Shown one piece after another: positions 3,995 through 9,900 of a stretch of 64,000 nt of DNA; the first letter of the stretch is position 1, and the number at the start of each line of letters is the position of its first letter. Source of the stretch: Octopus sinensis (taxonomy: Eukaryota); NCBI RefSeq assembly GCF_006345805.1, contig NC_043019.1:16863360-16927359 (forward strand). Reading direction: 5' to 3'. The notes beneath the pieces are model-generated. The model saw only the letters and a program-made list of their open reading frames with translations. It did not search any database and was not told where the DNA came from. A program made the position numbers and the translations under genes.

Positions 3995-6900
3995 GTAATT
4001 GTTTTAACAAAATCCATTAAAGTGTAAAAAAATATTTTTGATTATAGTTTGAAGAGTCGGCAATCATTTGTTGGTCTTCAATAGTAAAAATTTACCCAAC
4101 AAACAATATAAGTACGACCAGAAGTTTCCTCTGAGGAAGAGCTTTCATCACAGCAGCTGTACCAGTTTTTGTTTGTTTATAAATATGTGTTGTTATTTCA
4201 AGGTAGGCAGTGATTATTTCTTAAAGAGATGAAGCCTTTGAGATAATCTCTAAAGATGTTTGAAAGATTATAAAATATGAAGAGATACTTCTACTGTGTT
4301 GGTGCCACACAAAAGGTATCCAATCCACTTTGTAAAATGGTTGGTGTTCAGAAGGGCATCCAGCCATAGAAACCAGGCCCAAAATTGGAGCTTGGTGCAG
4401 CTTTCTGTCAAACCATCCAACCTATGGAAAACAGATGTTAAACGATGTTGAATGTGGAAGAATTGTAAAAAAATAAAAAAAATCTATCCTGATATGGAAA
4501 TGTACAATTTTATTCCCTGTTTTCTATATTTTCTGTTAGAACACCTTTTCTTTGTTTCAATTAATTTTGGCATTATTAAGCTGATGTTTAGAACCTAAAT
4601 TAGCATGGAATTTTGATGGTCAATTTAAAATCATTTTAAAACAGGAAGTTTTTATCAAAGACTCTGGTAAAAATCGATTTTCATCATATCTCTTCAGCTC
4701 CAGTCGATGGATAAGAAACACATAAATCTTCTTGATGTCTATTTACTTCTGTCATTTAAAAAAAATTAATTTCTGTGAAATTGTTTTCCATTTTAATTCC
4801 AGTTATTCAAGGCCATCAATCTGTCAAGTTGTCTCATTTCTGTGATGTTAAGAACGCCACTGCTCCCATGAAATTCCGTCTTCTGGCCAGAGTTATGGAC
4901 TACAGCCCCAAACTTAGCAGCGTATCAGACTTTTTAAGCTTATTTTGTCTTCAATGTCATTATCTGTAAGTATTAATCCACTAATTGCCACCTAATGATT
5001 AATTCTCATGACAAATCCCAAAACACTGGTTTTATAGGGTTTCACTTAAAAATATTTTAAGACGTATGTTTTATCAAGAATTGGTAAAATATTTTTGCAT
5101 TAGACTTTGAAGACATTCTTTGTGGTAAAAAGACAGTTATTTGTAACTGCGTACAGAACTGATATTTGTTGCATTTTTGTTTTAACCATTTAAAACTTGC
5201 TGTTACTACCTTTAAAATTTTTTAAGAATCTGCAAGTTTTTATGGGTTTATCAAGTTTTTAAAAATTTTCATTGTAACTTAAAAAATTTACATTTAAAGT
5301 GTCATTTTGTAATAAATGTAACGTTCAATAAATAGCGATATTCTTTTCTTCGAAATAACATTTAGATTTTGTATGTTTTCAACTGATATTTACCACCCTA
5401 ATTACCATTGTCTGTCCTAATTACCATTTTTCTATCCTAATTCTCTCTTTAGAACTCCAATAAATAATTACAATTTAGAACCGTCGACTTTTCAAATAAA
5501 GGATGGTGTTGAATATTACCGCTGCCCCCATTGTGCCAAGAAGACCAATTCTAATGGTAAGTGGTGATTGGGTTGTTCTAGCATGGCTTGAATGGTTGTT
5601 GATAATCATTGTCAACATCACTTGAGACCCATTTGTCTCCATTTTTATGGGTCAGATGAGATTCAGAGAGGCAGGTTTACGACAGGATGCTCTTCCTGTC
5701 AGCAATCCTCATCTTCAAGATTTCCCATAATCCTTCCAACTCGAACAACATAATTGCACGCAAATGACACTTTCCCTTACTGCTTTTCTACTCAACATAA
5801 TTCAGTTTTTCAACACTGTTTATGTAGTGGCTAAGACCTTTTTTTTTTAAAGTGAAATTGGTACTTCTTTTACCCTTTCCAAGGCAAATGTTTGGATGGG
5901 ATTGACATCATTCTGTTGGCAGAAACAAGAACTGGACCACTAAGCACAAAGAACAAGCAGGAAAGATCTGGCTGAGAATTAATTGTGGAATGGTATACAA
6001 AAGCCTAAGATTCTTGTTCTGTTATTCAGAACAGAAAGATTTCTTCTGATTATATGTCTACGGGGGGAACGAATCGAAAAGAAGTTTCATCTGTCATCTC
6101 TTGTCCAACTCCTGCTTCTTTGGACTGTGGCCCACAAATCCTTTTGGCACCTCTTAACCTATGTCTTTCAATACCATGTCCTGAAAATCAAAACAAAAGT
6201 TTTAGTGACTCATGCTGCTTGTGCTTCCATATTTTATGGCTGTGAGACTTGGGTATTATGCAATTAAAAAGATCACCTTAAAAGGTTTCATCAAGTTCAA
6301 TCAAGGTTGATCCTGAATGTTAAATGCAATGACTATTGTAATGATGATATACTGGCAAGGACAATCCAGAAGAACTCTTTGAACTCTCATGAAATAACAT
6401 CAACTCCAATGGATACATTTTGAAAAGGATACAAAAACGCCCAAATAGATCTTGTAATCTGGACTGGAAGAAGATCATCTCTCATGAGGTGCACCTAAGA
6501 AACACTTTTGTAACCCCATCAAGAGGACCATGCCCTTATTTAACATCTAGCCTAACAATTGGGAAACCCTAGCTGAGAACCGTAGGAATTGGAGGCAAGC
6601 ATGCAGAGAAGGGGTTGTTGCTGCAGATCACATTTCATACATCAACAAATTAAAAGGGAAAGAAGCTGAATAAAGAAAAGAACTCAGGAGCAGACCAGTG
6701 AGTCATCTCAAATATTGGAAGATACATCATCATCATCATCAAGCCCTTTCATGTGGCATCACACAGGCCCTTTCATGTGGCACCGCACGGGCCCTTTTAT
6801 GTGGAACCGCATGGGCTCTTTTACTCGGCACCACCACAAGTACTTTAAACAACCAGAAGGAATGATCTTAAAACTTCTGCTCTGTGGTACAGGTCTTCTT

Positions 6901-9900
6901 GAGTCCAGTCATGAAAAATGGAAACGTCAGCAGACTCAGTGAGAAGATTTTTCAAAACATTGTTAGCACTGAAGAAGCAAAGAGCTTATTCTATCCAATG
7001 CTGGTCAGGAGCCATGCGGTTTGTGAGAAAGGAGAAAACAAAGGGAGGACAGGAAACAGTAATAAGGAAAGGGAAATGGCAATGGGTGTTGTAGGGTACA
7101 GAGAATAAAATGGGAAGACAAGAAAGTTAGCCATGAAGAGGAAAGAGTGCAGTGGTAGAGGAGGGGGGGTGTTGGTGAATTTTGGGAAGCATGGAGTTTT
7201 TGAAGGATACTGAAAAAGAGAGAGAAAATAAGGTCACCATTAGTTACAATAAATATATTGTAACTAATATAAAATGATGTAATTAAGCATGTTTAATAAT
7301 TTGTGTCAACATTTGTCCAGGTGTGATAGGTGTGTGGTAAGAAGTTTGTTTTCCAACCATGTGGTCTTGTGTTCAGTCCCACTGTGTGACACCTTAGGCG
7401 TCTTCTTCTACAGCCCTGGGCTGATCAAAGCCTTGTGAGTAGGTTTGGTTGATGGAAACTGAAAGAAACCCATCGTGTGTGTGCGTGTGTTATTGCCTCC
7501 TTGTTTTGACATTGTGTAATAGTTGTAGATGAGTGTCAGTGTCATATAAGCAGGGTCGTTCATTTCCAGTCTTCCATGAAAACATGTCTGGTTATGGAGA
7601 AAATCTTACCTTGGAAACAGGTGTGGGTTGGTGACAGGAAGGGCATCCAGCTGGAAAAAATCTGCTTTGGCAAATTTTGTCCAACGCATGGAGACAAGGT
7701 CGTTAAAAACCCAATGACTTGAATATTTCTTTAATGTCTCTATTTTGTCTTTTGTGTGCTGCTGTATTAAGCAAACCTTTCTATTCCCTCTCTTTTGCCA
7801 TTGTTGTCCTTTCTTTGGAAGAGTAGAAAATACGTTAATTTTCGTTTTAGGTGAAATGATTTTCCTGGTTTTCTAGACTGTTGACTTCATCTTGTTTCTA
7901 TCCTCCATCTGACTGAATGGTTACAGTGTTGGGTGGACAATTATAAATGTGAGGATTTGATTCAGGGATTGGACAGTATGTTGTGTCCTTGAGCAAGCCA
8001 CTTCAACCCATGCAAGCATGGAAAAGTGAATATTAAAACAATGATTATGATGACAACGACGAGAAAATTGTCCTATTTTTATGCAATAAATTTTGAAATT
8101 CATTGAACACACATATTTAACGATCAGAATTTCTGCAATTTTTTTGTTTTACAGACATTCCAGTGATGGAATATATCTTTTTGATGAAGTTTATTCTGAC
8201 AGATGGCGTCTATTATATCATCGCCAACCTTTGGAGAGACGAAGCTGTAAGTTGCGTTTACACTTTTTAGTTTGATGACGACATTGACAAATGGGATGAA
8301 TGTATTGAAAGGAAATGACTGATGTTACTTTGACTTTCGATTTCCCTCTTGACCAATCTTATTTTGTATTGTAGCAAGATAACAGCAGCAGCAGCAGATG
8401 TCAAATCATGCTTATTATTATTATTATTATTATTCTGAACAATTACAAGGTAATGCCACGTAAAAAGTATCCAGTACACTTTGTAGAGTGGTTGGCATTG
8501 GGAAAGGCATGCAAGCCACAGAACTCAAGCCAAAACAGACTATGGAACCTGGTGTGGGCCCCTGGCCTTGCCAGTTCCTGCCTAGCTGTCCAGTCCGTGG
8601 TAAATGGACGTTGAGGCTGATGACGAATTGATGAAACTGTTAGAGTATCACGGTGTTTGTTCCAGCTCTTTACATCCTCTTTACAATGCAGTAAATGGTG
8701 AAGATGGGTGGAAGAATGAGCAACTAAAAAAAATGCAATATGGCAAATTACTTATATTGGAAAGCACACAGCCATTGAGAGTAAATAGCCTGTTTACTGG
8801 TCAGTATTTGATTGGGACTGGACAATAAATGATGGTTGAAGTGGGGAATGGAGAAAGAGGGGCATAGGAAGGGAGGGAGTGGTGAAATATGAAAGTCCCA
8901 TCAGCATTATGTACACACACACATACATTAATCTCACACACATTTCTTCATTGTAACATCCACATTTTTATGCTTGCATGTGTCTGACAATTTATTGAGG
9001 GAGACTTTCTACGGCTGGATGCTCTCGCTGTCCTCAACCTTCACCTGTTTCCAAGCAAAATAATATTTGCCTATGATTGATTGATTGATTCTAGTTTCAG
9101 CTTATGAGCTGTGGCCATGCTGGGGCACCGCCTATAGTCAGACATGTTTTACAAGGAAGACAGGAAATGAAATGAAGAACATCCTATCAGTGTCAACACA
9201 CAAATACAATGGGCTTCTTACAGTTTCCATCTACCAAATCTACTTACAAGGCTTTGATTGGCTGTAGTAGAAGAAACTTGCTCAAGGTAGTGTGCTGTGG
9301 GGATGAACATGAAACCACAAAAAAAAAGCCACCCCCCCTTTCCTGGCCCCTCCACTCCAAAACGCACCCATCCTCCTGCCCACTGCTGGACCCCTATAGT
9401 ATATTAGTTCCATTTCCTCGCTGTCTTATCTCCGTCTCGGATAAAACCACTGGTCACTTTTAATATTTTTGGAAGAAGGAACTTCAATGTTGTTTTTATT
9501 GTTGTTTAAATGAGGTCAGCACTGGTCAAACTGACCATAGGTCAGAGTTGTATATTGCAACTGTACTATCCAATGTATCAATTTGTTTTAAGATACTATT
9601 CATCATCATCGTTGTCGTTTAATATCCGCTTTCCATGCGAATTCGACTGAGGGCTGGCGAACCAGACGGCTGCACCAGGCTCCAGTCTTGATCTGGCAAT
9701 GTTTCTACGGCTGGATGCCCTTCCTAACGCCAACCACTCCGAGAGTGTAGTGGGTGCTTTTTATATGCCACCAGCATGGGGCACCGGCACAGGTGCCAGT
9801 AAGGCGACGTTGGTAACGATCACACTCGGATGGTGCTCTTGGCACCCTACTACTACTACTACTATTATTGTGATTTGAAAGAAGTTTGGTTGCTATTTCT

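What the first reader, a model, noticed from the sequence alone, without database searches (positions are those of the whole stretch)
4803..8246. POT1 OB3 appears to lack the Holliday-junction-resolvase-like (HJRL) insertion: compact 4-Cys zinc ribbon
Seen: the assembled exons give CLQC-(26 aa)-CPHC, then only ~8 aa before IPVMEYIF. The intron between the two Cys-pair exons is 487 bp, AT-rich, and shows no obvious ~90-codon exon. Established (recalled): in human POT1 the Zn ligands C382/C385 and C503/C506 are ~117 aa apart, because a ~145-aa HJRL domain interrupts OB3; HJRL supplies part of the TPP1-binding surface. Inference: this animal's POT1 has a minimal, RPA70C/TEBP-alpha-like zinc-ribbon OB3. 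That implies a different or reduced TPP1 interface, and it bears on when HJRL was gained or lost in metazoans.
Basis: partly seen in the sequence, partly recalled or inferred. Interest (0 to 1): 0.7.

Follow-up and report, generated by a model that had tools for sequence, protein, structure and literature searches.

The report
Octopus POT1 lacks HJRL: known pattern
The octopus telomere-capping gene POT1 really does lack the roughly 145-residue domain that splits the last fold of human POT1, but this short form is normal for invertebrates and was published in 2021, so the finding is correct and ordinary.

Summary
Window exons 4803-4965, 5453-5556 and 8155-8246 (+ strand, canonical AG/GT) join in frame to CLQC-26 aa-CPHC-8 aa-IPVMEYIF. 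NCBI's Octopus sinensis and O. vulgaris POT1 models use the same junctions.

No hidden exon restores an HJRL:
- Intron 1 has no stop-free stretch longer than 39 aa.
- A 147-position HJRL HMM finds nothing in any frame of the 64 kb window.
- Pfam POT1_C_insert (PF21375) scores 228 bits on a primate POT1 and does not hit any of 9 invertebrate POT1s.

AlphaFold2 folds the window-encoded 186-aa C-terminus as one compact domain (pLDDT 93.7). Its best structural matches are human POT1 OB3, then S. pombe Pot1 OB3, RPA70 DBD-C, TEBP-alpha and Teb1C.

The short form is not special to octopus. The Cys-pair spacer is 12-49 aa in 53 representative POT1s, including cuttlefish (with transcript contigs), chiton, bivalves, gastropods, an annelid, a brachiopod, spiders, a jellyfish and amphioxus. 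It is 111-123 aa in vertebrates.

Myler et al. 2021 (Genes Dev, PMC8653790) already state that HJRL is vertebrate-specific and that the Zn cysteines are always kept.

The parts
3845..3994 (+). POT1 linker exon (50 aa, ALGSSPNKMV...LSTVT) between OB2 and OB3. It is included in the O. sinensis model and has a counterpart in the O. bimaculoides fragment. It is skipped in the O. vulgaris model.
   Evidence: tblastn of P0001, 100% identity; AG/GT borders and reading frame; homologous stretch in P0286.
4803..4965 (+). POT1 OB3 exon: strand beta1 and the first zinc knuckle CLQC (Cys codons within 4946-4957). It aligns to human C382/C385.
4966..5452 (+). Intron of 487 bp, 26% GC, sitting where the bulk of HJRL would be. 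It holds no exon-sized open frame (maximum 39 aa) and gives no HJRL HMM hit.
5453..5556 (+). POT1 OB3 exon: zinc-ribbon hairpin and the second knuckle CPHC (5523-5534). It aligns to human C503/C506.
5557..8154 (+). Intron of 2598 bp holding what looks like transposable-element debris and a 24-bp tandem repeat. No HJRL-like coding sequence.
8155..8246 (+). POT1 OB3 exon (IPVMEYIFLMKF...WRDEA): strands beta2-beta3. It aligns to human residues 535-557.
11936..12136 (+). Last POT1 coding exon (VKFFNN...IFDTLIAA plus TGA stop): helices and strands beta4-beta5 of OB3. It is 100% identical to the O. vulgaris model.

Best explanation
The window carries the 3' part of the single-copy octopus POT1 gene: the linker plus the C-terminal OB fold, OB3. 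OB3 here is one compact domain of about 186 aa. [quoted passage not shown] By homology, the four cysteines bind one Zn2+ that stiffens the ribbon against the barrel. The domain most likely serves as the docking site for the TPP1/ACD orthologue. It would use the OB groove and the helix-alpha2 pocket, which correspond to human binding modules 3 and 2 and to the way S. pombe Tpz1 binds Pot1 OB3. It would lack the HJRL groove, which is human module 1. What is shown: the exon structure, the absence of HJRL coding sequence, the conservation of the four Cys, the predicted fold and its structural neighbours, and the wide occurrence of the short form. What is inferred: zinc binding and the mode of TPP1 binding. 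The short ribbon is the usual and probably ancestral metazoan state, and HJRL is a vertebrate addition, as already published.
For: Exons join in frame with canonical splice sites and match three independent octopus gene models: O. sinensis, O. vulgaris and O. bimaculoides, all with a 26-aa spacer. Argonauta has 26 aa. Cuttlefish has 25 aa, seen on intron-free Logan transcript contigs of about 2-3.3 kb. Pfam PF21375 POT1_C_insert scores 228 bits on lemur POT1 residues 396-537 and gives no hit at E<=0.01 in 9 invertebrate POT1s, or at E<=1 in the window's OB3. An HJRL HMM searched against 3322 six-frame segments of the window gives a best E of 0.37, and that hit is exon B itself. The four Cys are invariant in 41 short-form OB3 domains and align to human C382/C385/C503/C506. 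The AlphaFold2 model has pLDDT 93.7 and pTM 0.87 as a single domain. Foldseek hits: human POT1 C-terminus E 1e-11 with TMq 0.77-0.79, S. pombe Pot1 OB3, RPA70 DBD-C, archaeal RPA, TEBP-alpha and Teb1 OB-C, all at E about 2e-5 to 1e-4. A sequence profile gives human POT1 at E 1e-32 in two stretches that skip about 95 residues, archaeal RPA at 4e-6 and S. pombe Pot1 at 4e-6. The spacer distribution is bimodal: 12-49 aa in 53 representatives and 100-129 aa in 94, essentially all vertebrate-type HJRL. Literature: Myler 2021, Chen 2017, Sun 2022.
Against: I could not reach RNA-seq junction reads from octopus itself, so the octopus evidence rests on gene models plus cross-species conservation. Zinc binding rests on homology and on the invariance of the four Cys. 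No octopus TPP1 was retrieved, so the binding mode is inference only. In human POT1 module 1 (HJRL) is the essential one, so it is not self-evident that modules 2 and 3 alone suffice here. Of the module-2/3 contact positions, the residues at 577, 580 and 623 differ in octopus. Position 584 also differs from human D584 (octopus R143), although the lemur proxy used for numbering itself has A there.
Confidence: 0.93

Rival explanations
1. Annotation or reading artefact: an unnoticed exon or alternative isoform in intron 4966-5452 or 5557-8154 restores an HJRL-like insert of about 100 aa.
For: No octopus RNA-seq junction reads were available here. Intron 2 contains stop-free stretches of up to 94 aa. 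The linker exon 3845-3994 differs between two annotations, which shows that the models are not infallible.
Against: Most of HJRL would have to lie in intron 1, where the longest open stretch is 39 aa. The HJRL HMM finds nothing in any frame of the whole window. The long open stretches of intron 2 look like transposable-element or repeat debris. Every cephalopod model, and the cuttlefish mRNA contigs, has the same 25-26-aa spacer. AlphaFold2 folds the short sequence confidently with no gap to fill.
Confidence: 0.02
2. Secondary loss: the metazoan ancestor had an HJRL (or another large insert), and cephalopods or molluscs lost it.
For: Some invertebrates have long inserts: sea urchin has 140 aa, and two unnamed representatives have 216-221 aa. 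Myler et al. describe OB-fold-like inserts in corals.
Against: None of the long non-vertebrate inserts matches the HJRL HMM or PF21375. Short ribbons occur in a jellyfish, an annelid, molluscs, a brachiopod, spiders and amphioxus. A single gain in vertebrates is therefore far more parsimonious. RPA70 DBD-C, archaeal RPA and Teb1C also match the short form.
Confidence: 0.04
3. The locus is a decaying or divergent POT1 paralogue or pseudogene, not the working POT1.
For: The window shows only the 3' part of the gene. The C-terminal tail differs between the O. sinensis model and the window.
Against: The ORF across the five exons is intact with canonical splice sites. Conserved motifs are all kept: the four Cys, ECC and IFDT. 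Only one POT1-like protein per octopus species turned up in searches of 5.8 and 1.8 billion proteins. The fold prediction is confident.
Confidence: 0.01

Closest known systems
Human POT1 C-terminal region, OB3 plus HJRL (PDB 5UN7, 5H65)
   Same: It is the orthologous protein, with the same OB3 barrel. The four Zn cysteines align (C49/C52/C79/C82 to C382/C385/C503/C506). The C-terminal ECC...YQIFDT motif is shared. Foldseek gives E 1e-11 and the sequence profile gives E 1e-32.
   Different: Octopus lacks about 95-100 residues between the Cys pairs and about 20 residues after the second pair. That is the whole HJRL domain (393-538), including the groove that holds TPP1 helix H1.
Invertebrate POT1 OB3 as described by Myler et al. 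2021 (Genes Dev 35:1625, PMC8653790)
   Same: It fits the published pattern exactly: no HJRL outside vertebrates, an insert of variable length, and Zn cysteines always kept.
   Different: The held text of the paper names no cephalopod. It describes OB3 as 'split' by variable inserts. In octopus, as in many other invertebrates, the 'insert' is no more than a ribbon hairpin.
RPA70 DNA-binding domain C and Tetrahymena Teb1 OB-C (PDB 1L1O, 4GOP, 8RK2, 3U50)
   Same: Each is a C-terminal OB fold carrying a zinc ribbon, used for subunit contacts. Foldseek gives E 2e-5 to 1e-4 with TM about 0.5. Profile hits to archaeal RPA (E 4e-6) and RPA70 (E 1e-3).
   Different: Sequence identity is only 8-15%. 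The partner is different (RPA32/14 trimerisation as against TPP1). The Pfam Rep_fac-A_C model does not hit the octopus domain.
S. pombe Pot1 OB3-Tpz1 (PDB 7CUI) and Oxytricha TEBP-alpha OB3 (1KIX)
   Same: Both are HJRL-free OB3 domains whose groove holds the partner peptide. They are the likely model for how octopus TPP1 binds.
   Different: Zinc is not mentioned in the S. pombe paper. Identity is about 14-15%.

Membership tests
POT1 (shelterin single-strand telomere-binding protein) | N-terminal DNA-binding OB1 (PF02765) plus OB2 (PF16686) | tested here: met
   O. vulgaris model P0002 scores 85 and 90 bits. P0001 has OB2. These exons lie upstream of the window, so the test was made on the annotated protein that shares the window's 3' exons.
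POT1 (shelterin single-strand telomere-binding protein) | C-terminal OB3 homologous to human POT1 OB3 | tested here: met
   phmmer E 3e-4 for three collinear pieces; profile E 1e-32; Foldseek E 1e-11, TMq 0.77-0.79.
POT1 (shelterin single-strand telomere-binding protein) | Four Zn-ligand cysteines (two CxxC) in OB3 | tested here: met
   They align to C382/C385/C503/C506 and are invariant in 41 sequences. Metal binding itself was not tested.
POT1 (shelterin single-strand telomere-binding protein) | Binds TPP1/ACD through the C-terminal region | not testable with these tools
This needs co-folding or a pull-down.
POT1 HJRL domain (Pfam PF21375 POT1_C_insert) | A domain of about 143-146 aa between the two Cys pairs that matches PF21375 | tested here: not met
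   No hit in the window's OB3 at E<=1 or in 9 invertebrate POT1s at E<=0.01, against 228 bits in lemur POT1. My own HJRL HMM gives a best E of 0.37 over the whole window. The spacer is 26 aa against 117 aa.
RPA70 DBD-C-type zinc-ribbon OB fold | OB barrel with a Cys4 zinc ribbon inserted between beta1 and beta2 | tested here: met
   In the AlphaFold2 model the secondary-structure order is beta1 (23-35), ribbon strands 45-48, 55-57, 68-71 and 74-78 flanking the two CxxC, then beta2 (95-105). Foldseek and profile searches hit RPA70C, archaeal RPA and Teb1C. This rests on a predicted structure only.
RPA70 DBD-C-type zinc-ribbon OB fold | Match to the Pfam Rep_fac-A_C model | tested here: not met
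   No such hit at E<=1. UniRef nevertheless names the O. bimaculoides fragment 'Replication factor A C-terminal domain-containing protein'.

The most novel reading that the evidence does not exclude
The short, RPA70C-like zinc ribbon (12-49 aa between the Cys pairs) is the ancestral metazoan state, present from jellyfish to amphioxus. On this reading most invertebrate OB3 domains are not really 'split' at all. HJRL, together with the TPP1 helix-H1 contact that is essential in humans, would be a single innovation on the vertebrate stem. Invertebrate POT1-TPP1 pairs would then bind in the Pot1-Tpz1 manner, through the OB groove alone. A side observation: cephalopod POT1 also seems to lack the N-terminal OB-N, which Myler et al. 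describe as missing only in primates and rodents.
Probability: 0.55. Interest if true: 0.3.

Novelty: already known. Interest (0 to 1): 0.12.

Why it matters
It matters little beyond confirmation. It adds cephalopods to a published pattern: HJRL is vertebrate-specific, and the Zn cysteines are universal. It also shows, with a confident model, that a POT1 OB3 can be complete with only a 26-aa ribbon. A compact OB3 of this kind would be a convenient minimal construct for asking what the zinc site does and how TPP1 binds when HJRL is absent. It supports the view that POT1 descends from an RPA70-like protein.

Tried and rejected
1. Hidden exons. I listed all stop-free + frames in both introns and ran a home-built HJRL HMM with filters off over every six-frame segment of at least 12 aa in the window. 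Nothing was found.
2. Pfam on the 119-aa joined peptide alone gave no family. The full OB3 gives only a sub-threshold OB_POT1A hit.
3. Search for octopus transcript fragments using the 186-aa OB3. It returned only the O. bimaculoides gene-model fragment, so there is no octopus mRNA evidence. Cuttlefish Logan contigs served instead.
4. The supplements of Myler et al., which would hold the species list and the insert alignment, are not held. I could not tell whether molluscs were in their POT1 figure. Their text does mention mollusc TRFs.
5. The model's coordinates are not exposed, so the Cys S-S distances could not be measured.
6. A literature search for cephalopod POT1 found nothing specific.
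8. My first coordinates for the linker exon were off by one (3844-3993). I corrected them to 3845-3994.
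Full report
**What is there.** The window is octopus genomic DNA, from the Octopus vulgaris/sinensis complex. On the + strand the segments 4803-4965, 5453-5556 and 8155-8246 each have AG before and GT after, and they join in a single frame. The joined sequence is ...SLFCLQCHYLTPINNYNLEPSTFQIKDGVEYYRCPHCAKKTNSNDIPVMEYIFLMKF.... That gives 26 residues between CLQC (4946-4957) and CPHC (5523-5534), then 8 residues before IPVMEYIF.

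A padded search of the 5.8-billion-protein collection returned NCBI 'protection of telomeres protein 1-like [Octopus sinensis]' (P0001, 100% identical over the peptide) and the O. vulgaris model (P0002, 97%). Both have exactly these junctions. tblastn placed two further exons in the window: the linker exon 3845-3994 and the last exon 11936-12136. The five exons give an uninterrupted 236-aa ORF that ends in TGA. The OB1 and OB2 exons lie upstream of the window.

**Is it POT1, and is HJRL really missing?** P0002 carries Pfam POT1 (OB1) and POT1PC (OB2). The joined peptide matches human POT1 chains in three collinear pieces, at human residues 339-391, 492-509 and 535-557.

I built a profile from 41 short-form OB3 domains (A1). 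It matches human POT1 at E 1e-32 in two stretches that skip about 95 residues of the human chain. A MAFFT alignment puts octopus C49/C52/C79/C82 on C382/C385/C503/C506. It leaves the positions of W424, R432, F438 and E461 (S461 in the lemur used as numbering proxy) opposite gaps. Chen et al. 2017 define HJRL as residues 393-538. They show that the zinc is held by cysteines from both OB3 and HJRL (PMC5394241).

Pfam has a model for the insert, PF21375 POT1_C_insert:
- It scores 228 bits on lemur POT1 residues 396-537.
- It gives no hit at E<=0.01 in octopus, Argonauta, cuttlefish, chiton, scallop, abalone, amphioxus or sea-urchin POT1.
- It gives no hit at E<=1 in the window's OB3.

**Could an exon have been missed?** Most of HJRL would have to be encoded between exon A and exon B. 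That intron is 487 bp with 26% GC, and its longest open stretch is 39 codons. Intron 2 (2598 bp) has open stretches of up to 94 codons. These look like transposable-element and repeat debris, and they include a 24-bp tandem repeat.

I built an HJRL HMM of 147 positions from 94 vertebrate POT1s and ran it with all filters off against 3322 stop-free segments from all six frames of the window. Its best hit, at E 0.37, is exon B itself, through the second CxxC. Nothing else reached significance.

Independent models agree on the spacer:
- O. bimaculoides: 26 aa.
- Argonauta hians: 26 aa.
- Cuttlefish: 25 aa.

The cuttlefish cluster contains Sepia pharaonis POT1 plus 14 Logan sequences, about ten of them near full length (616-620 aa) on contigs of 1.9-3.3 kb. 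A 616-620-aa ORF on a contig that short leaves no room for introns, so these are mRNA assemblies. I could not obtain octopus RNA-seq junction reads. That remains the one missing direct check.

**Structure.** AlphaFold2, run on the window-encoded 186-aa C-terminus with alignment A1, gives one compact domain with mean pLDDT 93.7 and pTM 0.87. No segment falls below pLDDT 50. The order of elements is:
1. beta1 (residues 23-35);
2. short ribbon strands flanking the two CxxC knuckles (45-48, 55-57, 68-71, 74-78);
3. beta2 and beta3 (95-105, 110-116);
4. helices;
5. beta4 and beta5 (161-170, 175-180).

So the ribbon sits between beta1 and beta2. Foldseek against the PDB ranks the matches as follows:

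| Rank group | Target | Score |
|---|---|---|
| First | Human POT1 C-terminus (5UN7, 8SOJ, 5H65) | E 1e-11 to 1e-9, TMq 0.73-0.79 |
| Next | S. pombe Pot1 OB3 (7CUI) | E 2.0e-5 |
| Next | RPA70 DBD-C (4GOP, 8RK2, 1L1O) | E 2.1e-5 to 8.3e-4 |
| Next | Archaeal RPA | E 4.1e-5 to 4.7e-4 |
| Next | Oxytricha TEBP-alpha (1KIX) | E 5.2e-5 |
| Next | Teb1 OB-C (3U50) | E 9.2e-5 |

The sequence profile also reaches archaeal RPA (E 4e-6), S. pombe Pot1 (E 4e-6) and RPA70 (E 1e-3). I could not read the model's coordinates, so the Cys geometry was not measured. Zinc binding is inferred from homology and from the invariance of the four Cys.

**How common is the short form?** A full phmmer scan of 1.84 billion representative proteins with P0002 gave 527 relatives. 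Among the 162 of the collected POT1 sequences whose OB3 is complete, the spacer between the Cys pairs is bimodal. It is 12-49 aa in 53 proteins and 100-129 aa in 94 proteins, with a few outliers.

| Group | Spacer between Cys pairs (aa) |
|---|---|
| Octopods | 26 |
| Cuttlefish | 25 |
| Chiton | 18 |
| Solemya | 26 |
| Oyster | 29 |
| Mya | 34 |
| Scallops | 38-46 |
| Abalone | 40-47 |
| Batillaria | 29 |
| Aplysia | 21 |
| Biomphalaria | 16 |
| Physella | 19 |
| Elysia | 22 |
| Annelid Owenia | 27 |
| Brachiopod Lingula | 27 |
| Spiders | 24 |
| Jellyfish Sanderia | 21 |
| Amphioxus | about 28-31 |
| Shark, gar, frog, lemur | 111-123 |
| Sea urchin (insert is not HJRL) | 140 |

The short ribbon is therefore the norm in molluscs and beyond. 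A single gain of HJRL in vertebrates is the parsimonious reading.

**What was already known.** Myler et al. 2021 ('The evolution of metazoan shelterin', PMC8653790) make three relevant statements:
- The Zn-coordinating cysteines are always present.
[quoted passage not shown] They also propose an RPA70-like ancestor.

Sun et al. 2022 note that S. pombe Pot1 and Oxytricha TEBP-alpha bind their partners through an HJRL-free OB3 (PMC9333443). I found no paper on cephalopod POT1 specifically.

**Likely mechanism.**
- Shown: the domain is an intact, conserved POT1 OB3 without HJRL.
- Inferred: the four Cys hold one Zn2+ that fixes the ribbon to the barrel.
- Inferred: octopus TPP1 docks on the OB groove and the alpha2 pocket. 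These are human modules 3 and 2, and match the Pot1-Tpz1 mode. There is no equivalent of module 1, the HJRL groove that is essential for the human interaction (Chen 2017).
- Caveat: the octopus residues at the positions of human D577, Q580, D584 and Q623 are A, M, R and E. The detailed contacts must therefore differ.

**Verdict.** The novelty rating is 'already known', and interest is low (0.12).

Noticed in passing
outside the window (5' part of the gene); L002:1-845, P0002, P0003, P0004: Cephalopod POT1 appears to lack the N-terminal OB-N. Pfam OB1 starts at residue 15 in O. vulgaris, 14 in Argonauta and 49 in cuttlefish. A 3335-nt cuttlefish transcript contig has 845 nt upstream of the ATG. 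That stretch has many in-frame stops and no open stretch longer than 63 aa in any frame. The oyster, abalone, Lingula and amphioxus models also start at OB1. Myler et al. 2021 state that only primates and rodents lack OB-N.
   Followed up: partly
window 4803-8246 versus 11936-12136: The window is identical to the O. sinensis model in the three OB3 exons, where the O. vulgaris model has three differences. In the last exon it is identical to the O. vulgaris model, including the stop position, while the O. sinensis model differs and has a longer tail through a frame change. The window therefore seems to come from a third genome or haplotype of this species complex.
   Followed up: partly
window 3845-3994: A 150-nt in-frame linker exon is included in the O. 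sinensis model and has a homologue in the O. bimaculoides fragment, but it is skipped in the O. vulgaris model. It is either an alternative exon or an annotation difference.
   Followed up: partly
window 5557-8154: This intron holds what looks like repeat and transposable-element debris. It includes a 40-aa open stretch, PNNWETLAENRRNWRQACREG... (6551-6670), which from memory resembles the C-terminal tail of retrotransposon ORF2 proteins and has no Pfam hit. It also holds a 24-bp tandem repeat at 6731-6821.
   Followed up: partly
window 21365-34037, - strand: The neighbouring gene on the opposite strand looks like an inter-alpha-trypsin-inhibitor heavy-chain (ITIH) family member. There is an ITI_HC_C hit at 21365-21811 (E 4e-9) and a weak VWA hit at 27555-28232 (E 0.018).
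   Followed up: partly
window 51803-52813 (-), 60411-60875 (+), 62757-63146 (+): Tc1/mariner-type transposase remnants: DDE_3 (E 3e-9) with HTH_Tnp_Tc3_2, mariner Transposase_1 (E 4e-21), and a weak DDE_3 hit.
   Followed up: partly
window 32285-32739, 24298-24460, 19659-20400, 28931-29471: A 62-bp tandem repeat occurs at two places, with 7.3 copies (96% matches) at 32285-32739 and 2.6 copies (80% matches) at 24298-24460. There is a 742-bp (TTATTA)n tract and a 22/168-bp tandem array. No tRNA genes were found in the window.
   Followed up: no
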